IMG/VR virus record: IMGVR_UViG_3300032294_002797
Location: 62,001-126,000 of that record
Strand: one strand, 5' to 3'
DNA length: 64,000 nt
Positions 42,609-64,000 of the stretch are shown in pieces. Position 1 is the first letter of the stretch; every line of letters starts with the position of its first letter. A program made the translations under genes and the position numbers. The notes under the pieces were generated by a model that saw only the letters and a list, made by a program, of their open reading frames with translations, ran no database searches and was not told the origin of the DNA.

Positions 42609-45600
42609 ATGTCGTGCTCTATTTTTCGCAAATCGTTAATTGCTGATATCAAAGATATAAATATTAAAGATTTTGATATATCTTGGCTATCTTCTATGAT
42701 ACCAGGATATAAACCCGGATTAAGTGGCGTATGGCAACCTATATGGGTTGCTGGTACTAATTCTAGTATAGAATATGTAGAGCCATTAATTAAGCCTCGC
42801 ACCGGCCCATCACCCACATTTAATCCTTGTAATTGTACCGATGGCAGCATAAATCCACAGGACATAGAAGATCAAGTGACGGATTACAACCGCTGCAATT
42901 ATTGTGGAACTTATTCGACATCTTCAAGTCTTATAGATAATAGAAAACAAAGGTCTCCGCGATCATATACTTTTGATTGTTGTAATGGTGCTTGTGATAC
43001 AAGATTTAAAAACGATGATTTTATACAGAAAATACCCGTGCTTAATCAATCTTATATAACAGGATTATTAGACTCTAAATATCATGGTCAATTCCCAGCG
43101 TGTAATAATCAGGGGCTGGGTAAAGAAAGATTTATCAAAATTCCGGCTAGTCGGCGCAATAAAATTTTAGGTCCGGACTTGTGCATAGACTGGAGACTAA
43201 AGGAAACTATTTCAGAAATTCCATATGACTCCCTTTATAGTCAACATGATTCAGAATATTTGCATAATAAGTCATATAAAAAAAGCCAAATGCTAAGTGA
43301 TACTTGTGGTAATTTTATTATGTTGTCTCTCCCAGAAACAGAAGAACCTAGTAAAAACTGGTATCAAGAACAGTATCCGATATTGAGGGGCCTAATAGGA
43401 ACAAAAGTTCTCAATGACACCCCTATTAATATACTTCCGAATCCTGATCAATTTAAAAATATACCCTATGGGATAGATCAAGAATCATATAAAAACATTT
43501 TTATTAAAAATCAAAAAATAGGATCATATTGGAAATGGAATTATAGCTCTGGTATTTTATGTTGGTATAGATACTATAATATAGGAGTAAGTCCAAGCGA
43601 TGATCCGAGACCTGTACCCGGCGTCGATTTATACATCCCTCCCGGTGATGTTTTTTTTGCTACCAACGATGGCCCTGAACCAGCAACCGATCCAGTAAAT
43701 CCATTATCTGTAAATCCTAGGTCTCAAATACAAAGTTGTCCTTCTGGTTTAAAGTTGATAAATAATGGTGAAGTTACTGGCATAGTGCCTAGTGGATCTC
43801 AATTTTGTTATATATCTAATAATCTATATGAAAAATTTTATACTGCATATAATGTTATAAATCAAACTCAAGACGTTACATATATAGATGCCTTCAAAGT
43901 TGCCGCTGTACTAGCCACTTCTCCGCAGTATGATAAAATTACTGTAGATCTTTTAAAAACAAATATCATATTTGATTATCCTCGTAATATTTATAAGCAA
44001 ATAGATATTCTTAATAGAGATATGCAGAGTGGCACATCATATGATTCTGTGTCTCATTTAAACTATATTTCTGATAAAAAAGAATTATTGACCACTTTGA
44101 GCCAAAAATATGGAGCATATCTGTGGGTGCCTCCAAATACAGAATCTACAATTACTTTTGATAAATCAATATCTTCGTCATTTGCTTTAGATATAGATTT
44201 TGATATGGTTATTAAACGAACAGATTCTCTATGGAGATCTAGTACATGTAATCCTATGAAATCGTGTGCGGAAAGATCGGTAACAAAAAATTTCAGTTAT
44301 AGTCAAGAGATAGGCTTTTCCGATGCTATGCTTAAAACAGAAACTAGGGATGATGTGAGGTACGCCCCCACTTGCAACACCGGAGATGGTTCGGTTATTG
44401 GGAAAAATTTTAGCTTATTTTCTAGTGTTTATATTAATAGTTCAAAAATCAAATCAGTTTTTACTTCTAGTGGCTGTATATTTTTTGAAGATATTTATCC
44501 AAGAATCGCTGGCACTGATACTAGTATATTTTGCGATAATTGTGATAAAAACAGCTCCTATTATCTAATAGAAAATGTAGAGAGTGCAGAATGTGGATCT
44601 AAAGCTGGCAACGATAGTTTTTGTTACAAAACACTAGCTAGAAGATTCAATAATTCTCCGCCGCAATTTCCAGGAGATCCTAGTCCTAGCGGCACTCGCA
44701 CAGAAAGAACCGTAGCCGATGGTACTATACGATGGAAAAGAGGATACAAATCTTTATTTTTTAATCCTCATATCGATTTAGTTGCTTTCCATCAAGAAGG
44801 AGGTATATTTTTTAATAGCGTTCCTCTTGGCATAGATAATCAGACATTTTTTGAGAAAACTTCTTCCTTGTCTGAAATTAATATTGATCAAATTCAAATT
44901 AAATTTGCTACTAAAGATGTTGGTATTAAATTATATAAATTAGAAGCCGAATATCTTCAAACATCATCCGATTCCTCTGCCAAATGCAAAAGATTCCCCG
45001 TTAAAACCACTTGCAAATGTATGCCCGTATCAGTTTCTCCCACCCATCCTATATCTTGCGACGATCCAAATCCATCCACATTTTCTAGTTCCAATCTATA
45101 TACGCCGAATGTATCTACCAAATATGCTCCTAAATTAAAAAAATATGGTGGATATAATCAAATATATTTAGACAAAATTTTTAATGCTGGAACTTTAATC
45201 GCAGAAAACACCACTCTGCCCACACTATCAAAAAAAATAGATCCGTTGAATCCCTATGGCTGTGGCTCAAATGCATCGATTACTTTGCGCAACTATACCA
45301 ACACTTTCTGGAATATCGATTTAAATAATTTTTCTACAAATCATGCGGATATTCGCGCGAGGGTTACCGAGAATGTTGATCTTTTTGCTCCGCAATGGAG
45401 CATTCTGATTCGATTTGGAGGACGAGAAGAGGGCTTAGAATATATTCCTAATAAAAATTATCGTAGATTTACTACTAAAGTATCTTTGGAATATGGTGGA
45501 GGATCTACAGATTTATATGCCAATCAGTCGTCTGTTATCCTAAACAAAGATGATAGTGTTCCAAAAACTATCACTGCTCATTTACAGAATCCTTTTTTGG

Positions 45601-48600
45601 AAGCATTGATGACGACCAGGGGTGCAAAAAAAGACACCGTCTTATATCCACCATCTGGTAAGTTGTTACATGATTTTATTTTTAATCCTAATAGTCGCTG
45701 GAGTCCTCCTCTTAGGGGCAACGAAACTTCTATAGTTACATTGTCTATTAATCAAACTCCTAGAAAACAAATTTTAAATTTTGTAGTACCACCCGCTCAG
45801 TCTATGGGGATATTACAAAAGGGTTTTTTCCATCCTAATAGTGGCCTTACCAGTTCTATAACGGATAAAACACCGATCAAAAACAACAAGCTATTTTATG
45901 ATAAGCCCATATCTGATAATGTAGAGTACGATGAAGGTTTCTGTTTATATGGTTCTTTAACACAACAAGTTCTCAATGTAATACGAGACGTTAATAATTT
46001 TGATAAGCACAGAAAACTTAGACTATATTTATCAGTTAATGATCGCTGGTATGAGTTTCAGCATCCCAATAGAGGAGGATATTTATTAAATAATCAACAA
46101 TATATTGGAAGTCCTAATATTTTTGAGTATATTTCTAAGTTAGAATCAAGTAAAGGACTTCCTATTTTGTTACCGGCAGCTCCTAAAAAACATATAAAAT
46201 ATAATTACTTATATAATCACTATAAATATAGTAAACAAGCACTACCAGAATTTCCATTATTGTCTAATGCTTTTTCATATAATAATAGCACCAAAGAGAT
46301 TACCATACTGGGTACTCGTCATTATTTTATGGTTCCAGAAATAGATCCATCTATAGACACCGAATTAGGCTCTATGGATGACATAGCCAACTTTAACCCC
46401 AGTAGTCCCCTAGATTATGCTCAGATGATTAGATTTGCCGATGGTTCTCATTGGCTATGTCTTAAACCAGAAGCTCCATCAGTACGAACATCTTATATTT
46501 GGACAGATTATGATTATCTATATCATGTTTTTAGTGATATGCATATTGATTTTAATAAAATTTCTAAGCAAGGTTATGTATATAATACTAAAAAGCCATG
46601 CGACTTTTCTTTTTCTACATACAATCCATATGATAAAAAATGGGATACCGCTAATAAAATTATAAGTAAAAAAGTTTTGGTTAAATTCGTAAAGAAAGAT
46701 GGAAGCCCTATTAGAAATTTGAGAACAGAAGATGTCTATATGATACCATATACAGTTTTTACTATTACATTACCTATCAGAAATAGTAAATATACTTTTA
46801 TAGATTTATTAGGATCGGCTAATAATCCGGGAGATAATAAAAATTTTCATTCGTTCACCACCACGTCAATTACCGCTCCACTAGCCGAAAATGACTCTAA
46901 ATTATTAAATAAGTATATTCCTAGTAAGTGGGGAGATGTTATTAATTATGATGGCACTATTTTAGATCCTTATACAGACGCTTTTGTAAACCCTGAAGAC
47001 TTTTACCCATCTTCTACATACAATAATGATTTCTATAAAATAATTGTTAATAATCATGATAAATTAAAACATAATTATCAAATAGAAATTAATGGAGAAC
47101 TTATAAATATAAGCCATGAAGACTTAGTCTATTATAATATATTACAACCCTATAATATAGGAGACAATGGAGCATATTCGATACAAACACAAAAATATCA
47201 TAATTATTTACCATTTATAGATATTAATTTATTAAGCTCAGAAGAAGCCTCTAGTATAGATCAAAAGATAAAAGAAGCCGCCGCCGATAGCATAAAGAAT
47301 AACACAGCAATGACCGGAACGATTAGCATGAACGGTCTACTAAAAAACTTATCAAATTTTGATAATAGTTTTATCAATCCCGATACTGCTCCGGATCCAT
47401 ATTTCTGGATCAATTTCACACAAGGAGAGAATTTGGTGAAGTCAGCTTTTGTGCCGACACAAACTATTTATAGTCCTACTCTTAGGTTTGATGATCCACC
47501 ATACTGGTTATCAAGTACTACGGTAAAAAATCGAAATATATCTACTGATTCTAGATATACTTGTAGAGAGAGGTTTGAACCTCAAAGAATCAATTCTTAT
47601 ATAGCTACTACTACTAAATTTGATAATTCTTCATCTTTCAAAAGTACCACGCTAACTAGACAGACACCATATTTTAGATATCCGATACATTGCGATACAG
47701 ATGACGACACATGTGCTAATTCAGGATGTAATACAGATCTTAATGCTGGTATGATGCAGGTGGGCTGGAAAGAACTGATTTCTAATTATAGAGTAGGCGT
47801 TGAAGAAATCAAGAATATAACAACATCATCAATACCATTTATTTTAAGCTATGACGCAGGAATCTATAATACTGTTGGGAATACCAGTCCTATAACTATT
47901 AAAAGATTTGAGTTAGAACCAAATAATGAGATAGAATTTGATTCTTTTTCATGTGATAATGATAAAATTTTTCCTGCTAATTATAAATCTTCTGTTATTA
48001 ATCCTATTTATCAAAAAACTTTGGATAATACGCCCGATATTACACATGATCTTATAGTAACAAATACAGACTTGGTGGCCAACGAAATGCTATTCCGTAT
48101 ATTATATGGAGAAGCACAAATTATTAATAAAAAAATGTTAAGTATAAATAATAAGATACTTTCTAAATATGATTTAATACAATATTCAGACCCAAAAGTA
48201 GAAGCTAAAGATATTTATAACCAAATTTTATATAATTTTGATAAAAATGCTCCAATGGATAATCTTAATATTAATGGCAGCCTTATTGTTAATGGCGTAA
48301 TGAGTGTTAGATCAAATACAACTATAGTTATCAATGATATCACCGCTAACTTACAGATTGTTAAAGAAAATAATAAAATTTATATTAGAGGTACTATCGG
48401 GGACAAAAATATCGATATACTAATTTATGCAGAAGTATTAACGCGTAAAAGATATTTAATTCAGCAATATGGTCCTGGTTTATGGATTGATGGGACAAAT
48501 AGGGGGAATACATGGAGCAAACCAGCTCCGCCAACTTCAGCCGATGAAAATACAACGATTGTTTTCCAAGGACAATGTAATGTTCATGCTAGAAGAGTAT

Positions 48601-50927
48601 TTACGCTATTTACCGCTACAAACGCTTCTTTTTGTAGCGGCCAAGCTAGGTCAGGTGTTATATCTGATACCAGTAGCTATCCATGCAAACGAACACTAGA
48701 TACATCTAACCTTGCTAGTGGAGGAAGTGTGCAAGCAGGATTTACTAATGCGGAAGCTAGATGGAGCAGAGGTTTTCCTGGAGCAATATCCTGCTGGTCT
48801 AATATTACTAATATTCCTATGAATGGAGAATTCCTTCCGTTTAGACAGTGGGTTTGTGGAAAGCCTGTTTGGGGGCCAATAAGTTTTGGAACTATGAGAA
48901 AAGAGGCAATTCCCTATCGTTGTGCATATGGCTATAATACTACAGGAACAGATAATTGTGCTGATTTTGAAGTAGGATATTGTAGAAAGAAACAATGCGA
49001 TTTATGTGATGAGGTTGTTGAGAATGTAGATGAAATTAATGTTAAGTATGAATTTCAATTTTGTCGAACTCGATTTAATTTATATGGGCATGCCTATAGG
49101 GAAAACCTCAGGCCTCTACCTACTCTAAGAAGAGTACCAGAGACATATCCAACATATTCTGTACAAGAATATCAAGACTGGGTTGTTGGGAGCATATGCA
49201 ATTCCTTCTTTAGTCCGGGTCCTGATGCACAGTATTGTAGTTGCGCAAGTTACGGAGTGAGCAGATGCTCAGAACCACCTGAAATGTGTGGCAGGTGTTG
49301 TGCTCCTACTACCTGTTGTATTTGTCCGCCGGACTGCGATCCTGGCTGTGCTTCATGTTTCAGAGGAGATTATATTCAAGCTAGTCCGGAAGATGATGGT
49401 ATAAGTATAGGAGGAGGATATTGGCCACAGCAACCCGGAGAACAATATGATCCTTGTGCAGATAGAGAGGATGTATGCGGAGTGAACTCATACGGGGATA
49501 GAAGTGTTGCATATTATAGAGATATTTATCTCATGACCGAAAAAAAGATAGAGGATCAATATAATCCGTTGTGCGCCACGCCATTAGTTCAAATCAATTA
49601 TACTAGCAAATCTTTAACATTTCGTATTAGAGAAAAAGAATACTGTTTTCCAGTATCTTTGAGTACGTGTCCAACTATTAATATCTCATCATCTATGGAT
49701 CAATTGTATGTAGATGATACTGTAGACAGCAGATGCGAAAACTGTACTCAAGAAATAGGTCAGTTGTCCGTATCTGATCAAAAACAAAATTTTCTTGTCA
49801 GAAAAGAAAAAAGAAAGTGTGTGTTAGGAGTTAAATACTTTGCTAATGTTAATAGTAGAGGCATTGTTGGTGGAGGTCAGATATATTACGAATATAGAGG
49901 AGACTATCCATTGGGTAGTAATAGTTGGAGAACTCAATGTGGCGGTGGTCCTATAGAATATGGTTGTTGGGAATTTGGAAGTACTATGGGAGGGTGGTCG
50001 GATCTATTTATGCCTATGGGAATAGAATGCGATAGGCCAATTACTACGGATTACTGGGGTTCGGGTTCGGCATCCTTGGCTAGTTTAGAAGTAGATGAGT
50101 GGAAATGGGAATTATCTCAATTTTTAAGAAAAAGATACCAATACTTATCCCAAGGAGCAAACCATATTCCTGAAGAGGATATTATTGACGGAATAGTGCC
50201 CGGTAGTGTTAGTGAATTACAGATAGAATCTTATAATGTGGGCGGACAAAAAATAACTCGTGGTGGCGGAATAGTGGATAATGTTGTGACAGCTTATATA
50301 GCATATTATGAATATGACTATATCAGACCGGCTACTCTACAAGATATTTTACGAGATGATAGCTCACTTATATGTGTGGCTGGTAGAGAATATAAAGAAA
50401 ATATTCAACGGTCTTTAGCTACTATAGGCAAAGGCGGGCAAGATGCTTCTATAGCAGCCCAACAATTATATGGTGGTTGTCCTTATGTGGGCTTCCCACC
50501 TAGTTATAGAGATAATCTAGGAGATGCCTCGGGCTTAGGCACAGCCCGTAGATATTTTTACTACAGTGGAGATTCATCTACACCAGGAGCCATAGAAGGA
50601 TCAACTTATACGGTCACATCTCCGTTATATAATCAAAATACTAATTGTAATAATAGTTTATATTGTTCTCATAAATATAATGTTTATATCTGTCCGCAAG
50701 CACAAAACATTTGTTGTCTTGCTGATTTAGAAGTTATAGATAATACTGGAGATCCAAATTGCAGTAGTACTGGAGCACCTCTTTGTGATAAAGGCAGCTC
50801 TGCAACATGCTCTACCTTGAACATATATCCACCATGGATACAATATATAGACGACTGGTATAAAGCACTTGGCTGGGATGGTGCCCCCGTTAGAGGCCCA
50901 CAATTTTGGACGAGTCCTCGATTTTAA
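42609..50927 (+). CDS. Giant Cys-rich virion-associated protein (2772 aa)
   Basis: Uninterrupted ORF at the end of the tail module; Cys clusters at the N-terminus, middle and especially the C-terminal third. Confidence 0.7.
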   Translation: MSCSIFRKSLIADIKDINIKDFDISWLSSMIPGYKPGLSGVWQPIWVAGTNSSIEYVEPLIKPRTGPSPTFNPCNCTDGSINPQDIEDQVTDYNRCNYCGTYSTSSSLIDNRKQRSPRSYTFDCCNGACDTRFKNDDFIQKIPVLNQSYITGLLDSKYHGQFPACNNQGLGKERFIKIPASRRNKILGPDLCIDWRLKETISEIPYDSLYSQHDSEYLHNKSYKKSQMLSDTCGNFIMLSLPETEEPSKNWYQEQYPILRGLIGTKVLNDTPINILPNPDQFKNIPYGIDQESYKNIFIKNQKIGSYWKWNYSSGILCWYRYYNIGVSPSDDPRPVPGVDLYIPPGDVFFATNDGPEPATDPVNPLSVNPRSQIQSCPSGLKLINNGEVTGIVPSGSQFCYISNNLYEKFYTAYNVINQTQDVTYIDAFKVAAVLATSPQYDKITVDLLKTNIIFDYPRNIYKQIDILNRDMQSGTSYDSVSHLNYISDKKELLTTLSQKYGAYLWVPPNTESTITFDKSISSSFALDIDFDMVIKRTDSLWRSSTCNPMKSCAERSVTKNFSYSQEIGFSDAMLKTETRDDVRYAPTCNTGDGSVIGKNFSLFSSVYINSSKIKSVFTSSGCIFFEDIYPRIAGTDTSIFCDNCDKNSSYYLIENVESAECGSKAGNDSFCYKTLARRFNNSPPQFPGDPSPSGTRTERTVADGTIRWKRGYKSLFFNPHIDLVAFHQEGGIFFNSVPLGIDNQTFFEKTSSLSEINIDQIQIKFATKDVGIKLYKLEAEYLQTSSDSSAKCKRFPVKTTCKCMPVSVSPTHPISCDDPNPSTFSSSNLYTPNVSTKYAPKLKKYGGYNQIYLDKIFNAGTLIAENTTLPTLSKKIDPLNPYGCGSNASITLRNYTNTFWNIDLNNFSTNHADIRARVTENVDLFAPQWSILIRFGGREEGLEYIPNKNYRRFTTKVSLEYGGGSTDLYANQSSVILNKDDSVPKTITAHLQNPFLEALMTTRGAKKDTVLYPPSGKLLHDFIFNPNSRWSPPLRGNETSIVTLSINQTPRKQILNFVVPPAQSMGILQKGFFHPNSGLTSSITDKTPIKNNKLFYDKPISDNVEYDEGFCLYGSLTQQVLNVIRDVNNFDKHRKLRLYLSVNDRWYEFQHPNRGGYLLNNQQYIGSPNIFEYISKLESSKGLPILLPAAPKKHIKYNYLYNHYKYSKQALPEFPLLSNAFSYNNSTKEITILGTRHYFMVPEIDPSIDTELGSMDDIANFNPSSPLDYAQMIRFADGSHWLCLKPEAPSVRTSYIWTDYDYLYHVFSDMHIDFNKISKQGYVYNTKKPCDFSFSTYNPYDKKWDTANKIISKKVLVKFVKKDGSPIRNLRTEDVYMIPYTVFTITLPIRNSKYTFIDLLGSANNPGDNKNFHSFTTTSITAPLAENDSKLLNKYIPSKWGDVINYDGTILDPYTDAFVNPEDFYPSSTYNNDFYKIIVNNHDKLKHNYQIEINGELINISHEDLVYYNILQPYNIGDNGAYSIQTQKYHNYLPFIDINLLSSEEASSIDQKIKEAAADSIKNNTAMTGTISMNGLLKNLSNFDNSFINPDTAPDPYFWINFTQGENLVKSAFVPTQTIYSPTLRFDDPPYWLSSTTVKNRNISTDSRYTCRERFEPQRINSYIATTTKFDNSSSFKSTTLTRQTPYFRYPIHCDTDDDTCANSGCNTDLNAGMMQVGWKELISNYRVGVEEIKNITTSSIPFILSYDAGIYNTVGNTSPITIKRFELEPNNEIEFDSFSCDNDKIFPANYKSSVINPIYQKTLDNTPDITHDLIVTNTDLVANEMLFRILYGEAQIINKKMLSINNKILSKYDLIQYSDPKVEAKDIYNQILYNFDKNAPMDNLNINGSLIVNGVMSVRSNTTIVINDITANLQIVKENNKIYIRGTIGDKNIDILIYAEVLTRKRYLIQQYGPGLWIDGTNRGNTWSKPAPPTSADENTTIVFQGQCNVHARRVFTLFTATNASFCSGQARSGVISDTSSYPCKRTLDTSNLASGGSVQAGFTNAEARWSRGFPGAISCWSNITNIPMNGEFLPFRQWVCGKPVWGPISFGTMRKEAIPYRCAYGYNTTGTDNCADFEVGYCRKKQCDLCDEVVENVDEINVKYEFQFCRTRFNLYGHAYRENLRPLPTLRRVPETYPTYSVQEYQDWVVGSICNSFFSPGPDAQYCSCASYGVSRCSEPPEMCGRCCAPTTCCICPPDCDPGCASCFRGDYIQASPEDDGISIGGGYWPQQPGEQYDPCADREDVCGVNSYGDRSVAYYRDIYLMTEKKIEDQYNPLCATPLVQINYTSKSLTFRIREKEYCFPVSLSTCPTINISSSMDQLYVDDTVDSRCENCTQEIGQLSVSDQKQNFLVRKEKRKCVLGVKYFANVNSRGIVGGGQIYYEYRGDYPLGSNSWRTQCGGGPIEYGCWEFGSTMGGWSDLFMPMGIECDRPITTDYWGSGSASLASLEVDEWKWELSQFLRKRYQYLSQGANHIPEEDIIDGIVPGSVSELQIESYNVGGQKITRGGGIVDNVVTAYIAYYEYDYIRPATLQDILRDDSSLICVAGREYKENIQRSLATIGKGGQDASIAAQQLYGGCPYVGFPPSYRDNLGDASGLGTARRYFYYSGDSSTPGAIEGSTYTVTSPLYNQNTNCNNSLYCSHKYNVYICPQAQNICCLADLEVIDNTGDPNCSSTGAPLCDKGSSATCSTLNIYPPWIQYIDDWYKALGWDGAPVRGPQFWTSPRF

Positions 50928-56497: not shown

Positions 56498-57387
56498 TAT
56501 TTGATATATACCTCTCTTTTAACATTACATACAATTTCATTGATTGATTTAGCAAATTTACTATAATTATGATTTATAGCTAAGTATTCATTAATATTCG
56601 TAGTATTCAGAGTTGTATCGGATGCAGTGTTGATAATAGTAATTATTTCTTCCGGAGTATTCACATGATATATATAAGATGTAAAAGCTGGATTTTGTTT
56701 CAGTGTTATCGGTATACATCCAGCAGATAATGCATACAATAAATTGTATCTATAGTTACTAGAAATATCTATACAAAATTTGTAGTTTTTAACAATATCA
56801 ATGTCGTTTATCTCTATCAGATCACAAGCTAATCCAGCGGTGGATGACACAATATGATGAATTTGTTGCGCTATGATACTACTATTTATAATAGCTATAT
56901 TTTTTGTTTTTATGTATGGTTGGTCTGTCTGCACTAGGGGCATTCCTATATCTATCACAAAAGATTTATCTGGCCTACCTAATGCATCATAGGAGTGCTC
57001 TGATAGGAAAATTTTTGTAATATCTTTAGTTTTTTCGTTTATTAGATACCTGTCTTCTTTCTTGTATTCATATACCTTATCTATAAATACCACAGATGGA
57101 ATATGATATATAAACGGGACATAACTTGTATTAATATATTTCTCTAATGAAAAATTCATGAATAAGCTATAATTATACATAGTGGCGCATCTAGCAGGAA
57201 TCTGAAAAAGACGATCATATAATTTTAATTTTGCGGCATCTTCTACAACATAGAATTGATCTTCAACAGAAGACATTAGGATATTATCTAAAATACTATT
57301 ATGTGGCTCATATAGGATACGACAAGACTTTGATTGTGCATCAAGGGTGTTGACAATAAGATTTTCTGCTATATAGCTTAGATGCAT
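56497..57387 (-). CDS. Glycosyltransferase-like protein (degenerate)
   Basis: YKFCIDISSNYRYNLLYALSAGCIPITL resembles a GT-B C-terminal motif. Confidence 0.5.
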   Translation of the reverse strand: MHLSYIAENLIVNTLDAQSKSCRILYEPHNSILDNILMSSVEDQFYVVEDAAKLKLYDRLFQIPARCATMYNYSLFMNFSLEKYINTSYVPFIYHIPSVVFIDKVYEYKKEDRYLINEKTKDITKIFLSEHSYDALGRPDKSFVIDIGMPLVQTDQPYIKTKNIAIINSSIIAQQIHHIVSSTAGLACDLIEINDIDIVKNYKFCIDISSNYRYNLLYALSAGCIPITLKQNPAFTSYIYHVNTPEEIITIINTASDTTLNTTNINEYLAINHNYSKFAKSINEIVCNVKREVYIK

Positions 57388-58511
57388 AATTTTTTACCTA
57401 TCTTAGCGTACGAATAATTATGAAGTACTTGTTCTGCGTTTAAACTTTTATTTGTATAATTCTTATGATTATTTTTATACATATCGAAAGCTTTTTTCAT
57501 TGTTTCTACTAAACTATAAATTTTTGGAGTATACCAAAATCTGTCAGCAGAAAAAATTTCATATTCTGATGGCAATGGTTTTTTAGTCATGATGACTGGT
57601 ACTTTCTCGGATTTGATCACAAATCCTGATGTATTATCTACGAAATCACAGAGACCGGTATTATCCATCACTATAGGAGTTTTACCAAGCGATCTTGCAA
57701 TTAATGTTTGTTTACAAAAATTATTACCAGATGCTATACTGATAAAACAATCCGCAGCGTTATGCAATCCTATCATATTTTTTTCATCAAAATATTCTGT
57801 AATAATTAGCTCATTTTTATAGGTTTTATTGATTTCTAATTGCTCTTTAATTTTGGATATATCATTTTGTATGCGATTTCTAAGATCTGATGGGCCTTTA
57901 TCTGTATTAGATGTTTTAATAATTAGGCTGACCCTATCTGTTTCTGTAAAAGCTATATTAAAAGCCCTAATGATAATATCTAGGTGAGGCCTATCAGAAT
58001 AATCCGCATAACAATAAAATTTAAATGTATGATCTATACAAGACGGTAATTGTATTTTATTTGTACTATTTGCTATTATAAAATCCACATCTACAGGTCT
58101 AGGTACTACATATACTGAAGTAGTAACTCCGGATTGTTCCAGCCATTTTTTTTCATATGTTGTGGTGACAAAAATACCATCTAGTTTATTTAAGATAATA
58201 ACAGCTCTTGTATTTATCCATCCTCCTGTCTCTACATTAATAATACCATAATTTCTAGGAGACGATCCTTTATTTGATGTATATAAAGAATGAGGCAATA
58301 ATTTCTGTATAATTATATCATATTCATTATATGCTGTATTTTCGCACTCTAATATATTTGGAGATATACTAGTATTGACATTATTAATATAATAATAAGG
58401 TCTAGTTGTTAATTTAATATCAGGATTACTAAGTAGTGCTCGTATATAATCTATCGATGCAAAGCCCCAGTCATCATTTTGCCGATATGGGCCTATAAAT
58501 AGTGCATTCAT
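57378..58511 (-). CDS. GT4-like glycosyltransferase
   Basis: VYVVPRPVD, VSLIIKT, GLHNAADCFISIASG..LGKTPIVMDNTGLCDFV; EX7E glutamates missing. Confidence 0.7.
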   Translation of the reverse strand: MNALFIGPYRQNDDWGFASIDYIRALLSNPDIKLTTRPYYYINNVNTSISPNILECENTAYNEYDIIIQKLLPHSLYTSNKGSSPRNYGIINVETGGWINTRAVIILNKLDGIFVTTTYEKKWLEQSGVTTSVYVVPRPVDVDFIIANSTNKIQLPSCIDHTFKFYCYADYSDRPHLDIIIRAFNIAFTETDRVSLIIKTSNTDKGPSDLRNRIQNDISKIKEQLEINKTYKNELIITEYFDEKNMIGLHNAADCFISIASGNNFCKQTLIARSLGKTPIVMDNTGLCDFVDNTSGFVIKSEKVPVIMTKKPLPSEYEIFSADRFWYTPKIYSLVETMKKAFDMYKNNHKNYTNKSLNAEQVLHNYSYAKIGKKLCI

Positions 58512-60187
58512 TTCACAGAGTCCTTCATTATGGCATAGTCTATAAAATCTTCTCGTCCCAACCTATCTTTGTTAGCTAGTGCTTCCATAGCCATATTATG
58601 ATTAGATATAAGATTATTTATTGTAGATACTGATTGATCAATATTATAGGGTTGGGTTTGAAGTCCATTTATAATAAAGCCGTATGTTAAGTCACTGATC
58701 ATATTTAATAAGATCATAGAAGAGGTGATTTGGTGGTTCGATAGTTTTTGAGATACTATTTTCATAATGGCATTGTGTGGGGTGTCATTGGACACAATAT
58801 CTTTCGATTCTATATTAGGAATTTTAGGTAATACTATATCCCATTTTCCTTGTAGTCCTGTTAGGTTCAAATTATCTAAGTATTTTTCCCATTTTTTAGC
58901 AATAATATCCCAACAATAATATTTTTCTGTAAGTTTTCTGGTTTCGAAACGCTTTTGTTCTCTGATAAGACTGGGCATATTAATGTGTTCATATAATATA
59001 TTGATCAAAGATTGATTATCAGGATATACTCTTACGGCCTTGGTTTCTAGTTCTTTAAAATATTGATTCACTTTTACAGGATATGCCTTTAACTTTTGTA
59101 TAACGTCGTTCATTGCGCTATAGTCTACTGATGCTATCGGAACTCCCGCTGCTCCTGCTTCAACCTGGGGCATTCCGAATCCTTCACAAATAGCATATTG
59201 TACATAAATATCAAATATATTATATATAGTATTTAGATCTTGCTGAGATATGCCATTACTAACATTAGGCATGGAAAAAGCTTTTTGTCCACACCTAGGA
59301 CAATGTGCAGATGGGTGCTGATATAGAGATGGCTTGTAAAAGCCACAATTTTTACAGGAATAGGTGAATAGCACCCTATTTCCTATTGCATATTCTTTTA
59401 ATAAGCGAGGAAGGTCCCATCCAGCATCAGGGTAACTGGTATGCAGATATAAATATACTTTTTCAGCTGCCGGGTTGTTATCTGTTTTGAGTTTGTCTAT
59501 AAAGTTTCTAACAGCTGAAAATAATTCTGGTATCAATTTTCTCTTTTGATTTCTCATCACCGAACCGATAATGAAAGCATCCGGATCGAGACCAAACGCT
59601 TGTTTTAATTGGCTTCTTTGATTGTCCGAATAATATTGAAATACGTCTAGATTGACACCCGGAGATGTGGTGTCTACATATTTTATGGCTCCATTACTCT
59701 GTTCCTTTAGAGTATCTCTGCCGAAATCTGAGTACGTAAATACCGCATCTGCATGACAGAACGTATCTATCCAATCATCTTGTTGTGGAGCGGAGTCTAC
59801 GGTTGGCATTAAGATCCAGTGAAAATAAGGTCTATATGGAGTAAATTGCTGATAAGAATTCATCCAATAGTCTCTTACATCTACGACCACATCCGGCTGA
59901 AAATCTAACAAAACGCGTTCAAATCTCCATCTTCCGAATTGATTCTCCATAGAGCTATTATATTCTTGGCTTCTTGGATCTCCACCGTCTACAGCATTGG
60001 CATAATACTTCCATTTGATTTCCGAATCTTTGGGATCATTGACTTTTCCATAGCAGGCAAATTCTGCAATTTCATATTTTTGAGAGGCATGTAGACGAGA
60101 TAATATTTCTTTGGCATATGTACCAAAACCAGAACTAAGAAAGCTAGCCTCTGATACCATCAGAACTTTGAGTTTTTTATTTGACAT
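58508..60187 (-). CDS. GT4 glycosyltransferase with Zn-ribbon insert
   Basis: SGFGTYAKE, FIIGSVMRNQKRK, EGFGMPQVE (EX7E), GVPIASVDYSAM; CKNC-x14-CPRC. Confidence 0.85.
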   Translation of the reverse strand: MSNKKLKVLMVSEASFLSSGFGTYAKEILSRLHASQKYEIAEFACYGKVNDPKDSEIKWKYYANAVDGGDPRSQEYNSSMENQFGRWRFERVLLDFQPDVVVDVRDYWMNSYQQFTPYRPYFHWILMPTVDSAPQQDDWIDTFCHADAVFTYSDFGRDTLKEQSNGAIKYVDTTSPGVNLDVFQYYSDNQRSQLKQAFGLDPDAFIIGSVMRNQKRKLIPELFSAVRNFIDKLKTDNNPAAEKVYLYLHTSYPDAGWDLPRLLKEYAIGNRVLFTYSCKNCGFYKPSLYQHPSAHCPRCGQKAFSMPNVSNGISQQDLNTIYNIFDIYVQYAICEGFGMPQVEAGAAGVPIASVDYSAMNDVIQKLKAYPVKVNQYFKELETKAVRVYPDNQSLINILYEHINMPSLIREQKRFETRKLTEKYYCWDIIAKKWEKYLDNLNLTGLQGKWDIVLPKIPNIESKDIVSNDTPHNAIMKIVSQKLSNHQITSSMILLNMISDLTYGFIINGLQTQPYNIDQSVSTINNLISNHNMAMEALANKDRLGREDFIDYAIMKDSVK

Positions 60188-60283: not shown

Positions 60284-60652
60284 TTAGAAGGCTACAGGTT
60301 GAGCTTCTTCTGTCTTGGCGCTAGATAGTCTAGCAATCTTCGAAAAATTATTTACTCTTACCTTGAGTGAATTATGCTTCACTCCATCCTTCTCCCAAGA
60401 ATCATTTCTAAGTGATCCTTCAATCATTACGAGATCCCCCTTCTTGAAGGACTTCCCTATAATTTCTGCCCCAGAATCCCACGCCTCACAAGGAACAAAT
60501 GTGGTAATCTTATCCTTGTCTCCGTTAGACTTTGTGTATTCACGAGACACAGCAATAGTAAAATTTACAACCGATGTTGTTTTACCATTGGTTGATACAC
60601 TCCTTAACTCTGGATCTCTTGCTAAATTACCTCGTAACATATTGATATTCAT
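60284..60652 (-). CDS. ssb: Single-stranded DNA-binding protein
   Basis: LRGNLARDPELR..VVNFTIAVSR..FVPCEAW..KGDLVMIEGSLRNDSWE; acidic tail ending PVAF; AAGGAG RBS. Confidence 0.95.
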   Translation of the reverse strand: MNINMLRGNLARDPELRSVSTNGKTTSVVNFTIAVSREYTKSNGDKDKITTFVPCEAWDSGAEIIGKSFKKGDLVMIEGSLRNDSWEKDGVKHNSLKVRVNNFSKIARLSSAKTEEAQPVAF

Positions 60653-60694: not shown

Positions 60695-60722
60695 ATTATA
60701 GAAATGGCCGACTCACGGTCAA
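60695..60722 (-). promoter_or_regulatory. Sigma70-like promoter for ssb
   Basis: TTGACC-N16-TATAAT on the minus strand; the -35 box overlaps the dnaE-C stop. Confidence 0.65.
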
Positions 60723-62344
60723 GTTTTTGGAATATAAGCCTTCTCCACTATGAAACTATCTCCAGTATTATTTTTTTTACCCTTAATAATAATTACATTA
60801 TTTTCGAATAATATATTTCTATACTGTTTATAAGTATCAGGGAAAAAAATGACACTATCTATTGATCCATAACTATCGGATAGGGTTACGAAAGCCATTT
60901 CTGAGCCTGGGGTCTTTCCTGTTTTTGTTTTTGTAATTCCTATGTTATCTATTTCTCCACATAGAATGATATTTTCTTTCATTAGCAATGTTTTGAATTC
61001 TTTACAATTGCAATTAGTCATACTGATATCATACATGTCTACTTTTGAACAGGTGACACTACAACCTAGCACCTCCTCCTCTATATCCGATATCCATTCA
61101 GCGTTATCATCCATAGAATATGGAGGACGATTTAAATTGTCTATTAAACTATAAATAATTTGTTTTCTTTTTTCTGTAAGCTTATATTGGGAGGTCATGC
61201 TTTTCATAGAACTCAAGAAAGACTCTCCTATATCAACTTTGCTGATTATAAATTCTATTTCTTTTTTTGTTAGTTCACAAGCTATACTATATTCGAATAG
61301 CATACTAGTTCGAGTTTTTTTGTCATAATTTAAAGCTCCACTTTTTATTAATGCTTTAGCAGACGTAGAATTAATATTTATTAATATTTGAAGTAGTATT
61401 TGATCCCATTTCATGGATTTGATATCTAAATGTTTATTAGTGATAAGACCACCTAGTTTATTAAATACTGATTCTCCAAAGCCTTTAATGTCCGTTAAAC
61501 CAAAATAGATACAACTATCTTTCAGTATGAATAATTTATTCAGATTTCTTAGATCAGGTATACAGACCTGAATATCCATTTCGGTGGCATTCTGCACAAG
61601 CTCTTTAATTTCTGCTTTTGGATCTATTTTATCTTTGGCGAACCTTAAATAAGAAGCAAAAAAAATCTTAGGGAAATGAGCTTTTGTATATGCAGATAAA
61701 TAAGCATTGATAGCATAAGATATAGCATGACTTTTATTAAAAGAATATCTTTGGCTCTTTTCTATCCATCCGAATATTTCTTCTGCTTGCGAGGCGCTAA
61801 CTAAACCCAGTTTTTCGGACCCTTGTAAAAATTTACTTTTAAGTTTGGACATTTCTTCTGGCTTTTTTTTACCAATAGCCTTTCTCAAATTATCTGCTTC
61901 CTGTAAATCAAATCCTGCTATATATTTAGCAATTTCCATTGCTTGTTCTTGATAAATCATCTCTCCGTATGTGGTCTTAAGAATATTTTCTAGACACGGA
62001 TGATAATAGTCGATAGACTCTTGCCCATTTTTTTTATCTATATAGTGGTTAGATACTGTTTTTCCATCTCTAATTGCCTCCAAGCACCCAGGCCTTAATA
62101 TGCTGATCAAAGCAGATAGATGTTCTATATTTCGAGGCTTTAGTTTTTTAGCCATAGACCGTCCAAGCCTAGACTCCAATTGAAAGCATCCTTTAGTATT
62201 GCCGTCAGATATTAGGTCCCAGGTTTTAGAACAGTCTAGATTTAAACTATGTCTAATTGGATCAAACTCCACCAATAACTGGTTGTTTTCTGATGGAATA
62301 ATATCGAATGAGCATCCACAATCGTAATTAAAAGTTTTAGGCAT
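60719..62344 (-). CDS. dnaE: DNA polymerase III alpha, C-terminal half (fingers, HhH, OB)
   Basis: GCFQLES, ILRPG, TYGEMIYQEQ, YSFNKSHA, IYFGLTDIKGFG, MAFVTLSD; likely start MPKTF at 62344. Confidence 0.9.
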   Translation of the reverse strand: MPKTFNYDCGCSFDIIPSENNQLLVEFDPIRHSLNLDCSKTWDLISDGNTKGCFQLESRLGRSMAKKLKPRNIEHLSALISILRPGCLEAIRDGKTVSNHYIDKKNGQESIDYYHPCLENILKTTYGEMIYQEQAMEIAKYIAGFDLQEADNLRKAIGKKKPEEMSKLKSKFLQGSEKLGLVSASQAEEIFGWIEKSQRYSFNKSHAISYAINAYLSAYTKAHFPKIFFASYLRFAKDKIDPKAEIKELVQNATEMDIQVCIPDLRNLNKLFILKDSCIYFGLTDIKGFGESVFNKLGGLITNKHLDIKSMKWDQILLQILININSTSAKALIKSGALNYDKKTRTSMLFEYSIACELTKKEIEFIISKVDIGESFLSSMKSMTSQYKLTEKRKQIIYSLIDNLNRPPYSMDDNAEWISDIEEEVLGCSVTCSKVDMYDISMTNCNCKEFKTLLMKENIILCGEIDNIGITKTKTGKTPGSEMAFVTLSDSYGSIDSVIFFPDTYKQYRNILFENNVIIIKGKKNNTGDSFIVEKAYIPKT

Positions 62345-63044
62345 GTTTATTTGACGACGATACAAATGAATCTTTGAACTTAACCTTTTGAGATACATTA
62401 CGATGAAGTTTTAGAAATCTCATCAGTATCTCTGCACAGTCCTTAACATCTTTAAGAGCATCATGAGCACCTTTTTTATCTATGCCTAGATAATCTCTAA
62501 GATTATCCATAGAATAGCTTTTAAGATCGTTATTTTGTTCAAACCAATAAAATACTAAGTTCATAATATCTATAACATCTCTTTGAAAGAAAATATTGCT
62601 ATTACCTTCTTTATTGGTATCCCCATATTTCTGACTTAATCTATCAATAATTTTTAGATCAAAGCGATTAATATTGTATCCAGCTGGTAGCGGCGCAGAA
62701 AATTGATTTTTCTTAGAACTTCTACTATGGTATTTTGTTAAATATTCTGTAAACATTTTCCAGGATTGTTCTTGAGGAGGATACTTGAGCCATTCGTCCA
62801 GTACTTCTTTTTTGGAAGAACCCTTAACTTTGGCATGAAAATCCAAGATATCAGTTTCATATACATACTCAGGATTTTTTTCCAAAACTTCGGGCTTGAA
62901 GTAAATATTAAATTCTGAATCTGGAATAATCTCTAGAGATATTGGATCAATTATCACCGAGGCTATCTGAACAGGACTACATTGAGTAGGATCGGAGCCG
63001 TCCGTCTCAAAATCAAAGACACATATTTTATTGTAGTTTATCAT
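62337..63044 (-). CDS. DEDDh 3'-5' exonuclease (DnaQ-like)
   Basis: ExoI VFDFETDG, ExoII AGYNINRFD, ExoIII HDALKDV. Confidence 0.9.
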   Translation of the reverse strand: MINYNKICVFDFETDGSDPTQCSPVQIASVIIDPISLEIIPDSEFNIYFKPEVLEKNPEYVYETDILDFHAKVKGSSKKEVLDEWLKYPPQEQSWKMFTEYLTKYHSRSSKKNQFSAPLPAGYNINRFDLKIIDRLSQKYGDTNKEGNSNIFFQRDVIDIMNLVFYWFEQNNDLKSYSMDNLRDYLGIDKKGAHDALKDVKDCAEILMRFLKLHRNVSQKVKFKDSFVSSSNKHA

Positions 63045-63226
63045 GAGTTATTAGATTGAATTACTTCCACCTCTGTAATGGGCACAACTTGTATCTTTTC
63101 TCCCGTAGCAACAGACTGAGCATTAAATACTTTGCAGCAACTCAATCTTTCGTCTGGTATTCTCAGGTATTCTTGTTGATTGTATAAAAATTTATCACCA
63201 TTTTTTAAATCTGCCATTCTTGTCAT
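63041..63226 (-). CDS. 61-aa small beta-barrel-like protein
   Basis: MADLKNGDKFLY..; abuts dnaE-N and overlaps the exonuclease start. Confidence 0.65.
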   Translation of the reverse strand: MTRMADLKNGDKFLYNQQEYLRIPDERLSCCKVFNAQSVATGEKIQVVPITEVEVIQSNNS

Positions 63227-63227
63227 T

Positions 63228-63998
63228 TTATTCTCCCTTTTTTAAAATATCTTGTATAGTCATAATTTTATCTAACATAGCAACTCCCAATATGTCAAAC
63301 TTTATTATACCCAAAGATTCTAAATCTTGCATCTCCATACCGGCTATCGTTTGCTCATTTTTTACATCGTACACCATAGGACATATATCTTTTAAAGCAT
63401 GGGAGCTGATGGCTATGCCGGCGGCATGCTTGGATTGATTAGATTTCGTGCCCTCTAATCTTATAGCCTGTTCGAACCTTTTGGCAAGTGGTCCTTGTAA
63501 TTGTTGATTCTCATCTAAATAGCACCAATCTTTTAATTTATCTCCATTATTTTCTAATGCCCAGCGTATAATAGACGCTTCTCCCGTTTCTTCTTTCATT
63601 TCTTGTAGATCGTCAGCTATTTTAGCTTCATCTGGTATGTGCTTGGTGATATTGTTCATTTCATCGAAAGAAATATTACCATAAACACGCAATACATCTT
63701 TCAAGGCTCCTCTTCCTTTGATTGTATTAAACGTAATCATCTGAGAAACTTTATCATGTCCATATTTCTTTTTAATATATTCGATAATATTTTCTCTTTG
63801 ATTGATAGGAACATCAACATCTATATCTGGCATAGAGATATGTTCTGCAGTATTTCTACCAGCATTATAAAATCTATCAAACATTAGATTATACTTAATT
63901 GGATCTATATTGGTAATACCTATTAAATAGGAGACCAAACAACCAGCAGCACTTCCTCTGCCCGGCCCGGGAAGCCAGTTATTGCTTCTTACATAGTT
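63228..63998 (-). CDS. dnaE: DNA polymerase III alpha, N-terminal catalytic half (5' end beyond the window)
   Basis: Frame is open from the window edge: GPGRGSAAGCLVSY, FDRFYN, SMPDIDVD, SKHAAG, KFDILG, then stop. Confidence 0.92.
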   Translation of the reverse strand, partial: NYVRSNNWLPGPGRGSAAGCLVSYLIGITNIDPIKYNLMFDRFYNAGRNTAEHISMPDIDVDVPINQRENIIEYIKKKYGHDKVSQMITFNTIKGRGALKDVLRVYGNISFDEMNNITKHIPDEAKIADDLQEMKEETGEASIIRWALENNGDKLKDWCYLDENQQLQGPLAKRFEQAIRLEGTKSNQSKHAAGIAISSHALKDICPMVYDVKNEQTIAGMEMQDLESLGIIKFDILGVAMLDKIMTIQDILKKGE

Positions 63999-64000
63999 CA

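What the first reader, a model, noticed from the sequence alone, without database searches (positions are those of the whole stretch)
60719..63998. Intein-less split DnaE with a proofreading exonuclease gene between the halves
The N-half carries the catalytic PDIDVD and KFDILG motifs and stops about 15 aa after KFDILG. The C-half resumes shortly before GCFQLES. No intein motifs appear on either side, unlike cyanobacterial split DnaE. A DEDDh gene and a 61-aa gene sit in the break, with tight or overlapping junctions. Inference: a non-covalent multi-subunit replicase whose proofreader docks at the split point.
Basis: partly seen in the sequence, partly recalled or inferred. Interest (0 to 1): 0.62.

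Follow-up and report, generated by a model that had tools for sequence, protein, structure and literature searches.

The report
Two-piece phage DnaE polymerase, no intein
An uncultivated 223-kb aquatic phage, like hundreds of its relatives, encodes its DnaE-type replicative DNA polymerase as two separate proteins cut at the palm/fingers junction, with a proofreading-exonuclease gene and a tiny gene in the gap and no intein or intron to rejoin them; I found no description of this arrangement for this polymerase family.

Summary
On the minus strand lie a DnaE N-half (624 aa; PHP, palm, thumb; it runs off the window end), a 61-aa gene, a 235-aa DEDDh exonuclease gene, a DnaE C-half (541 aa from its likely start at 62344; fingers, HhH, OB) and SSB. 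Junctions are tight or overlapping. The two halves tile the DnaE profile (positions 1-573 and 583-1022) with nothing missing. No intein, Hint or intron signal is present at the break. The same break is kept in all 80 fetched IMG/VR relatives and in 141 of the 150 best representatives. Relatives do carry cis-inteins and one split intein elsewhere in the gene, so intein detection works in this family. Some relatives hold unrelated genes (ThyX, UDG, a methyltransferase) in the gap, which shows two independent cistrons. The catalytic aspartates lie on the N-half and conserved finger motifs on the C-half. The best reading is therefore a non-covalently assembled two-subunit polymerase, translationally coupled to its exonuclease. 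Most split C-halves have gained an N-terminal hairpin with three invariant cysteines. The claim that the proofreader docks at the split point has no support. It is a new variant of the known genes-in-pieces kind.

The parts
63228..64000 (-). DnaE N-half (PHP + palm + thumb). Only its last 256 codons lie in the window. The full gene is 624 aa and runs to G000:C1:127102 (L001:4010-5884).
   Evidence: PF07733 at E 1.6e-58. TIGR00594 at 487.9 bits, above the cut-off, covering profile positions 1-573. Best PDB matches are Taq, M. tuberculosis and E. coli Pol III alpha. D426, D428 and D603 are invariant in 47 sequences.
63041..63226 (-). 61-aa protein (s61). It is a small SH3/KOW-like beta-barrel with an invariant CC pair (C30, C31) in the 28-32 segment between two predicted strands.
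   Evidence: No Pfam, PHROG or NCBIfam family. The 49-sequence alignment has F13, C30 and C31 invariant. The AF2 model has pLDDT 94.5. Fold matches are only generic, with Z up to 5. The nearest Atlas clusters are unnamed and almost all viral.
62337..63044 (-). DEDDh 3'-5' exonuclease (235 aa), a divergent DnaQ-like protein with a conserved C-terminal KFKxSF tail.
   Evidence: PF00929 at E 2.9e-13. PHROG 192 'DNA polymerase exonuclease subunit' at E 1.3e-23. The active-site residues and F223 are invariant. The family has 1418 clusters at 90% identity. No NCBIfam model reaches its cut-off.
60719..62344 (-). DnaE C-half (fingers + HhH + OB), 541 aa from the likely start M19. The longest ORF would start at 62398.
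   Evidence: PF17657 at E 2e-45, plus PF14579 and PF01336. TIGR00594 positions 583-1022. The AF2 model has pLDDT 94.3 and matches DnaE structures at Z 20-22, from E. coli alpha about 573 to about 1075. Homology in relatives starts at M19.
62225..62344 (-). Coding region for the N-terminal 'head' of the C-half. It holds about 22 extra residues forming a CGCxF hairpin, plus the LDC cysteine. C9, C11 and C38 are invariant.
   Evidence: The three cysteines are invariant in 67 of 67 aligned CxC-bearing C-halves. The CxC motif is present in 122 of 146 representatives. It is absent from unsplit relatives. The model shows three short strands at pLDDT 83-90, and residues 1 to about 20 lie outside the region that aligns to solved DnaE structures.
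60284..60652 (-). SSB, the next gene of the same replication operon.
   Evidence: PF00436 at E 1.1e-24. It is syntenic in distant relatives.

Best explanation
This is the replicase operon of a large uncultivated phage. The C-family polymerase DnaE is made as two separate polypeptides, cut in the linker between the palm and the fingers. The N-subunit (PHP, palm, thumb) carries the catalytic aspartates. The C-subunit (fingers, HhH, OB) carries conserved finger motifs. The two must associate non-covalently to form one active site (inferred).

The genes N, s61, exonuclease and C are translated from one message, with overlapping or 1-nt junctions. That arrangement would give coupled, near-stoichiometric synthesis (inferred from the sequence).

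The DEDDh protein is a trans-acting proofreader comparable to E. coli epsilon (inferred from family and context). The 61-aa barrel is an accessory protein of unknown role.

Most split C-subunits carry an extra N-terminal hairpin with three invariant cysteines. I propose that it stabilises the new N-terminus or clasps the partner, perhaps through a metal ion (hypothesis).
For: The two ORFs tile the DnaE profile without loss or overlap.

The break is conserved. All 80 IMG/VR loci at 60-74% identity have it. So do 141 of the 150 best representatives at 38-58% identity in a search of 1.84 billion proteins. Deep branches L091-L093 and L097 also show N, small genes, exonuclease, C.

Both halves are under strong constraint, and the active site is divided. 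D426, D428 and D603 are invariant on the N-half. Q132, E133, R154, K160, N203 and H206 are invariant on the C-half.

The halves are independent cistrons. Relatives hold ThyX, an FkbM methyltransferase, a DUF1559 protein, UDG or a homing endonuclease in the gap.

There is no intein at the break. Inteins are readily detected elsewhere in the family. About 54 of 150 relatives carry cis-inteins at about four sites in the C-half. L041, L051 and L058 carry a split intein plus an endonuclease in the N-half.

No Rfam intron was found.

The C-half folds confidently on its own as DnaE fingers to OB.

The Cys3 head goes with the split state.
Against: No biochemical or transcript evidence exists. No RNA run holds the locus.

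Association of the two halves was not co-folded, because only one complex job was allowed. The job I ran on the exonuclease gave no answer.

About 24 of 146 split representatives lack the Cys head (some are fragments or possibly mis-called starts), so it is not required for a split enzyme.

No fourth metal ligand was found.

s61 is absent from deep branches, which carry a different small protein.
Confidence: 0.8

Rival explanations
1. Protein trans-splicing by an undetected, atypical split intein rejoins the halves, as in cyanobacterial DnaE.
For: The family is rich in inteins. Relatives have a genuine split intein with an endonuclease in the N-half and cis-inteins in the C-half. The C-half head has conserved cysteines.
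Against: No Hint or intein match appears at E up to 10 on either end. The 18-aa N tail aligns with native DnaE sequence, so no N-intein piece is present. The extra C head is only about 22 aa. Headless split forms exist. In unsplit relatives the joined sequence simply lacks the head.
Confidence: 0.02
2. RNA-level joining, by a group I or II intron, trans-splicing or ribosomal bypass, yields one chain.
For: Phage polymerase genes often carry introns. A Bacillus jumbo phage has DnaE annotated in three pieces with non-coding gaps. L063 has a LAGLIDADG ORF interrupting the N-half.
Against: The whole 0.9-kb gap is filled by two conserved protein genes with 1-nt or overlapping junctions. No Rfam intron matched at E up to 0.1. 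The gap content varies from 0.9 to about 4.5 kb and includes unrelated genes. Across relatives each half keeps its own stop or start codon close to the same point.
Confidence: 0.03
3. The halves do not form a polymerase together. The gene is a decaying relic, or each half has a separate job, and the phage uses the host replicase.
For: No clamp or clamp-loader gene was detected in the phage. The C-half lacks a tau-binding tail. The PHP ligands look intact, so the N-half might act alone as a nuclease.
Against: Both halves are conserved at 60-80% identity across 80 loci and 38-58% across 150 representative clusters, with catalytic and finger motifs invariant. They are always co-encoded with DnaB, primase and SSB. 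Decay would not preserve this.
Confidence: 0.04
4. The break is an assembly or sequencing artefact, such as a frameshift or chimera.
For: The record is a metagenome assembly.
Against: About 0.9 kb with two conserved genes lies between the halves. Contigs from other samples of the same study span the junctions. Hundreds of independent assemblies share the arrangement.
Confidence: 0.01

Closest known systems
Cyanobacterial split DnaE with the naturally split intein (Wu, Hu & Liu 1998; Caspi 2003; as cited in PMC2677866 and PMC3919608)
   Same: The replicative C-family polymerase alpha subunit is encoded by two genes.
   Different: In cyanobacteria the halves carry split-intein parts, lie at separate loci and are ligated into one chain. 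Here there is no intein, the halves sit in one operon, and they presumably stay separate.
'Fractured genes' of environmental, phage-like DNA, including three DnaE loci with a split intein plus a free-standing homing endonuclease between the halves (Dassa et al. 2009, PMC2677866)
   Same: Aquatic metagenomic DnaE genes occur in pieces with a gene between the pieces. Relatives of this window (L041, L051, L058) show exactly this arrangement inside the N-half.
   Different: At the break studied here there is no intein and no endonuclease. The intervening genes are a conserved exonuclease and a small barrel protein.
Intein-less genes in pieces of T4-like phages: split PolB gp43 (Petrov & Karam) and split NrdA (Edgell and co-workers), as summarised in PMC2677866. 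The phage name and the endonuclease name for the NrdA case are from my memory.
   Same: An essential replication enzyme is encoded by two adjacent genes. The products are thought or shown to assemble non-covalently, and other ORFs lie in the gap.
   Different: Those are a B-family polymerase and a ribonucleotide reductase. Their gaps hold homing endonucleases and occur in a few phages. Here it is a C-family polymerase, the break is kept across a very large clade, and the gap holds the proofreader gene.
E. coli Pol III core (alpha, epsilon, theta; PDB 5FKU, 5FKV, 5M1S appear among the hits)
   Same: A DnaE-type polymerase is paired with a separate DEDDh exonuclease and a small third protein.
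   Different: Alpha is split in two here. The exonuclease reaches no NCBIfam epsilon cut-off. s61 is a beta-barrel, whereas theta is a helical protein (from memory). No binding has been shown.
Two-gene B-family polymerase of Methanobacterium thermoautotrophicum (cited in PMC2677866)
   Same: A cellular replicative polymerase is naturally encoded as two non-spliced polypeptides.
   Different: It belongs to a different polymerase family and domain of life, and no accessory gene lies in the break.

Membership tests
C-family DNA polymerase, DnaE type (Pol III alpha) | PHP domain followed by a palm with the catalytic aspartates | tested here: met
   PF07733 and TIGR00594 score above their cut-offs on the N-half. 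PDIDVD and KFDILG align with the Taq and E. coli motifs. D426, D428 and D603 are invariant.
C-family DNA polymerase, DnaE type (Pol III alpha) | Fingers, HhH and OB domains | tested here: met
   PF17657, PF14579 and PF01336 match the C-half. The model aligns to DnaE structures at Z 20-22.
C-family DNA polymerase, DnaE type (Pol III alpha) | One continuous polypeptide | tested here: not met
   There are two ORFs about 0.9 kb apart. The break is conserved in relatives.
C-family DNA polymerase, DnaE type (Pol III alpha) | C-terminal tau-binding region and use of a clamp | tested here: inconclusive
   The model ends at the OB domain, near E. coli residue 1075. No DnaN or clamp-loader Pfam match was found in the phage genome. 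Clamp-binding motifs were not analysed.
Split-intein DnaE (cyanobacterial type) and 'fractured genes' | N- and C-intein parts at the two ends of the break | tested here: not met
   No Hint or intein hit at E up to 10. Positive control: the same search detects the split intein of L041 and L051 and cis-inteins in relatives.
'Fractured genes' (Dassa 2009) | Free-standing homing endonuclease between the halves | tested here: not met
   The gap holds a DEDDh exonuclease and a 61-aa barrel. A GIY-YIG endonuclease occurs only in relative L090.
Intein-less genes in pieces (gp43A/B and split NrdA type) | Two adjacent genes that together encode a complete enzyme, each with its own start and stop | tested here: met
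Intein-less genes in pieces (gp43A/B and split NrdA type) | The products assemble into an active enzyme | not testable with these tools
   This is inferred from the divided active site.
DnaQ / epsilon proofreading subunit | DEDDh active site | tested here: met
   D11, E13, D129, H194 and D199 are conserved. PF00929 and PHROG 192 match.
DnaQ / epsilon proofreading subunit | Equivalog-level sequence membership | tested here: not met
   The best NCBIfam hits score 18-30 bits against cut-offs of 189-335. PDB profile hits are weak and partial, to a PolC-type exonuclease domain, entries named exodeoxyribonuclease III and Exo I.
DnaQ / epsilon proofreading subunit | Binds the polymerase | tested here: inconclusive
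   The co-fold of N-half + s61 + exonuclease gave no answer. This is not evidence either way.
Theta (HolE)-like small core subunit, for s61 | Homology or shared fold with theta | tested here: not met
   s61 is modelled as a beta-barrel whose best matches are EF-P domain I, KOW and Tudor folds at Z up to 5. It has no family hit.

The most novel reading that the evidence does not exclude
A globally distributed clade of large aquatic phages replicates with a C-family polymerase whose active site is built across a non-covalent palm/fingers interface. A Cys3 (possibly zinc) hairpin that evolved on the new N-terminus of the fingers subunit holds the interface together. The enzyme is co-translated with its DEDDh proofreader and a small barrel subunit, forming a four-protein 'split Pol III core'. 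In this reading the split was ancestral to the clade and was reversed at least twice by re-fusion.
Probability: 0.3. Interest if true: 0.72.

Novelty: new variant of a known kind. Interest (0 to 1): 0.55.

Why it matters
Every solved C-family chain matched here is a single chain, and the natural splits described in the papers I found are all healed by inteins.

A conserved intein-less split would show that the palm/fingers junction is a natural seam of the enzyme. It would give a ready-made two-piece system for studying finger closure, for segmental labelling and for engineering DnaE.

The same gene family carries cis-inteins, a split intein and a plain break side by side. It is therefore a natural testbed for how essential genes get broken and perhaps re-fused.

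There is also a practical point. Annotation pipelines will call these genes truncated or 'partial' DnaE in hundreds of phage genomes.

Tried and rejected
Complex prediction. It gave no answer (ipSAE 0.00). This is no evidence for or against binding. The N + C pair was therefore not co-folded.

Rfam. A scan of L001 and three variant loci found no intron or other RNA family at E up to 0.1.

Sequencing runs. No RNA run holds the locus. Laying DNA contigs only confirmed the arrangement. Two low-support 'joints' with sides of 24-25 letters were disregarded as cross-matches.

Promoter and terminator scan. Counts were at background level, and no terminator lies between the four genes.

s61. It has no Pfam, PHROG or NCBIfam family. 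Only 3 close homologues were found by the word-index search. Fold searches gave only generic SH3, KOW and Tudor matches. The nearest Atlas clusters are unnamed and almost all viral. I considered s61 as the metal-sharing partner of the Cys3 head. I did not adopt this, because deep CGC-bearing branches lack s61.

Fourth metal ligand. A search for a split-specific Cys or His in the N-half or the C-half found none.

Phylogeny. Unsplit relatives nest inside the split clade in three trees. The AU test of the alternative gave p = 0.058, so re-fusion versus a single fission is not settled. A 94-row version of the test did not finish in three runs.

Host. Close relatives in GTDB genomes sit in MAGs of conflicting taxonomy, probably through mis-binning.

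Literature. Four searches found no paper on an intein-less split DnaE. Absence from this library is not proof of novelty.

Isolated phages. The closest records share at most about 35% identity and are unsplit, or are interrupted elsewhere with non-coding gaps.
Full report
**Where the window lies**

The window is bases 62001-126000 of a 223,302-bp IMG/VR virus record. CheckV estimates it as complete, and its GC content is 35%. The finding lies at the right end of the window. I fetched the flanking DNA as L001 to see the whole N-half. No genetic code other than table 11 was used.

**Anatomy**

All genes below are on the minus strand.

| Gene | Window coordinates | Size | Evidence |
|---|---|---|---|
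| DnaE N-half | 63228 to beyond 64000 | 624 aa | PF07733; TIGR00594 at 487.9 bits, above its cut-off |
| s61 | 63041-63226 | 61 aa | no family match |
| DEDDh exonuclease | 62337-63044 | 235 aa | PF00929; PHROG 192 'DNA polymerase exonuclease subunit' |
| DnaE C-half | 60719-62344 | 541 aa | fingers PF17657, HhH PF14579, OB PF01336 |
| SSB | 60284-60652 | 122 aa | PF00436 |

- The longest C-half ORF would start at 62398. In every relative, homology begins at M19 (window 62344), so the product is about 541 aa.
- The s61 ATG lies 1 nt after the N-half stop, behind AAGGGAG.
- The exonuclease start overlaps the s61 stop as ATGA.
- The M19 start of the C-half overlaps the exonuclease stop by 8 nt.
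- No terminator-like site lies between these genes.
- Upstream in the genome lie a DnaB helicase, a DnaG-type primase and a ribonucleotide reductase.

**The two halves make one complete DnaE**

- The N-half covers TIGR00594 positions 1-573 and the C-half covers 583-1022.
- Against Taq alpha, the N-half ends near residue 639 and the C-half resumes at 647. Against E. coli alpha, the C-half resumes at 589.
- The AF2 model of the C-half (pLDDT 94.3) superposes on solved DnaE structures from E. coli residue about 573 to about 1075, at Z 20-22.
- The cut is therefore in the linker between palm and fingers.
- The invariant aspartates D426 and D428 (PDIDVD) and D603 (KFDILG) lie on the N-half.
- The invariant finger motifs YQEQ, RKAxGKK and FNKSH lie on the C-half.
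- From what I recall of Pol III alpha structures, finger residues of this region contact the incoming nucleotide. On that basis neither half can be a polymerase alone. This step is an inference.

**No splicing element at the break**

- Neither the N tail nor the C head gives any Hint or intein match, even at E up to 10. The 18-residue N tail aligns with native DnaE sequence.
- Intein detection works in this family, which serves as an internal positive control.
  - About 54 of the 150 best representatives carry cis-inteins (PF14890, often with LAGLIDADG) at about four sites of the C-half.
  - In L041, L051 and L058 the N-half is itself broken at GRG|SAAG by a split intein. Its N part is about 91 aa and begins with Cys. 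Its C part ends in VHN followed by Ser. A free-standing PD-(D/E)XK-like endonuclease gene lies between the two parts.
  - That is the 'fractured gene' arrangement that Dassa et al. described for environmental DnaE loci (PMC2677866).
- Rfam finds no intron, and the gap is fully occupied by two conserved protein genes.

**Conservation**

- The search for related loci found 421 IMG/VR stretches encoding a relative of the C-half. The best 80 (60-74% identity) all show N, small ORF, exonuclease, C in that order.
- A full HMMER search of 1.84 billion representatives with the C-half gave 20,986 hits. Of the best 150 (38-58% identity), 141 begin at the split, 5 are fragments and 4 are unsplit.
- Deep branches keep the split but vary the gap:
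  - L091 has N, an 87-aa gene, exonuclease, C.
  - L092 has three extra genes in the gap.
  - L093 has UDG and two other genes.
  - L097 has N, a 77-aa gene, exonuclease, C.
  - L090 has a GIY-YIG endonuclease and a thymidylate-synthase-like gene upstream of C.
- L059, L060 and L062 hold 1 to 3.6 kb of extra genes between the exonuclease and C. In L060 and L062 these include an FkbM methyltransferase, a DUF1559 protein and ThyX. The two extra ORFs of L059 have no Pfam match.
- These variants show that the halves are ordinary independent cistrons. The most constant adjacency is exonuclease then C, usually with overlapping stop and start.
- Contigs from two other samples of the same study span the junctions of the window's own sequence.

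**A feature that goes with the split**

- Split C-halves carry about 22 extra N-terminal residues with a CGCxF motif. The CxC motif is present in 122 of 146 representatives.
- C9, C11 and C38 (counted from M19) are invariant in 67 of 67 aligned CxC-bearing sequences.
- Unsplit relatives lack the hairpin. In forms without it, the third cysteine is often Asp.
- The model shows a small three-stranded element at pLDDT 83-90. Its first 20 residues or so lie outside the part that aligns to solved DnaE structures.
- I found no conserved fourth ligand in the C-half and no split-specific Cys or His in the N-half. A metal site is therefore only a hypothesis.
- Headless split forms exist (L097, L099), so the head is not obligatory.

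**The gap genes**

Exonuclease:
- It has all the DEDDh residues and an invariant C-terminal KFKxSF tail.
- It belongs to a family of 1418 clusters at 90% identity, which JGI often names 'DNA polymerase III epsilon subunit-like'.
- It reaches no NCBIfam cut-off. Its PDB profile matches are weak and partial.
- Unsplit relatives keep this exonuclease with the same tail but encode it elsewhere. In L089 it lies directly upstream of DnaE. In L088 it lies 4 kb downstream, between the glycosyltransferase genes.
- That argues against a docking role tied to the break.

s61:
- It folds confidently (pLDDT 94.5) as a small SH3/KOW-like barrel. The invariant CC lies in the 28-32 segment between two predicted strands.
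- Structure matches are generic, with Z up to 5. Only unnamed, almost all viral clusters resemble it.
- Deep branches carry a different small-protein family after N.

Other points:
- The PHP metal ligands of the N-half appear intact, so there may be two candidate proofreaders.
- No clamp or clamp loader was detected in the genome.

**Evolution**

- Unsplit relatives nest inside the split clade in three trees. They are P0068, and the clade of P0028, P0077 and P0098. The state needs at least three changes on the tree.
- L088, which encodes the unsplit P0098, shares the SSB and glycosyltransferase synteny of the window.
- This pattern suggests an ancestral split with re-fusions. However, the AU test of the alternative (unsplit forms plus outgroups on one side) gave p = 0.058. 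The question stays open.

**What was not shown**

- No transcript or protein data exist for this locus.
- The single complex job (N-half + s61 + exonuclease) gave no answer and is not evidence either way. N + C was not co-folded.
- No host could be assigned. Close relatives sit in MAGs of conflicting taxonomy. The DUF1559 genes in L060 and L062 are only a hint.

**Comparison with what is known**

- The literature I could search speaks of split DnaE only in the sense of the cyanobacterial split intein and of Dassa's fractured loci.
- The functional analogues are the intein-less two-gene polymerases: gp43 of some T4-like phages and PolB of Methanobacterium. Both are cited in PMC2677866.
- The present case is a C-family polymerase, split at a different kind of site. 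The split is conserved over a very large uncultivated phage clade, the proofreader gene lies in the gap, and the new terminus carries a lineage-specific Cys3 element.

**Verdict**

I rate this a new variant of a known kind, with moderate to good interest.

Noticed in passing
window 13495-29670, 29683-34149, 37267-42594, 42609-50927 (+ strand); also an ORF ending at window 18: The window holds very large ORFs of 5391, 1488, 1775 and 2772 aa, plus a 4690-aa ORF that starts before the window. Neighbouring genes hit PHROG tail-fibre, baseplate and virion structural families.
   Followed up: partly
window 57378-58511 and 58508-60187 (- strand): Two glycosyltransferase genes follow SSB. The SSB plus glycosyltransferase block is syntenic with the DnaE genes in distant relatives (L088, L090, L093, L097, L099). 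It is an unusual fixed companion of a replication module.
   Followed up: partly
L041:3235-4445; similar in L051 and L058: In these relatives the N-half is itself broken at GRG|SAAG by a split intein. The N part is about 91 aa. The C part ends in VHN followed by Ser. A free-standing PD-(D/E)XK-like endonuclease gene lies between them. DnaE is therefore encoded in three genes there.
   Followed up: yes
L063:3395-4560: A LAGLIDADG ORF in another frame interrupts the N-half at the PDIDVD catalytic site. I did not resolve whether this is an intron, a frameshifted intein or a further split. Rfam gave no intron hit.
   Followed up: partly
proteins P0006-P0154 (relatives of the C-half): About 54 of 150 representative C-halves carry one or two cis-inteins at about four sites, near query residues 120, 150, 176 and 224. 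Many include LAGLIDADG domains. This is an unusually intein-rich gene family.
   Followed up: partly
L060:2355-5847 and L062:3383-5847: An FkbM methyltransferase (shown for L060), a DUF1559 protein with a prepilin-type N-methylation motif, and ThyX lie between the exonuclease gene and the C-half. I recall that DUF1559 is expanded in Planctomycetota, so it may hint at the host. This was not tested.
   Followed up: no
L090:825-1556 and 4467-5657: A GIY-YIG homing endonuclease lies just upstream of the C-half, and a TnpB-like gene (Cas12f1-like_TNB) lies beside SSB. In this relative the exonuclease is not next to the C-half.
   Followed up: no
L001:4010-5884 (N-half) and the whole genome G000: The PHP-domain metal ligands look intact, so the polymerase may have a built-in nuclease as well as the separate DEDDh protein. 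No sliding-clamp or clamp-loader Pfam match was found in the 223-kb genome. The C-half has no tau-binding tail.
   Followed up: partly
L100-L103 (GTDB genome contigs): Close relatives (59-71% identity) sit in MAGs labelled Flavobacteriales, Chitinophagia, Alphaproteobacteria and 'bacterium'. These are most likely phage contigs mis-binned into MAGs.
   Followed up: no
L086 (Bacillus phage vB_BceM_WH1, LC597490.1:194353-198551): This isolated jumbo phage has DnaE annotated as three CDSs separated by non-coding gaps of about 0.4-0.7 kb, at positions different from the break studied here. The gaps are probably introns.
   Followed up: no
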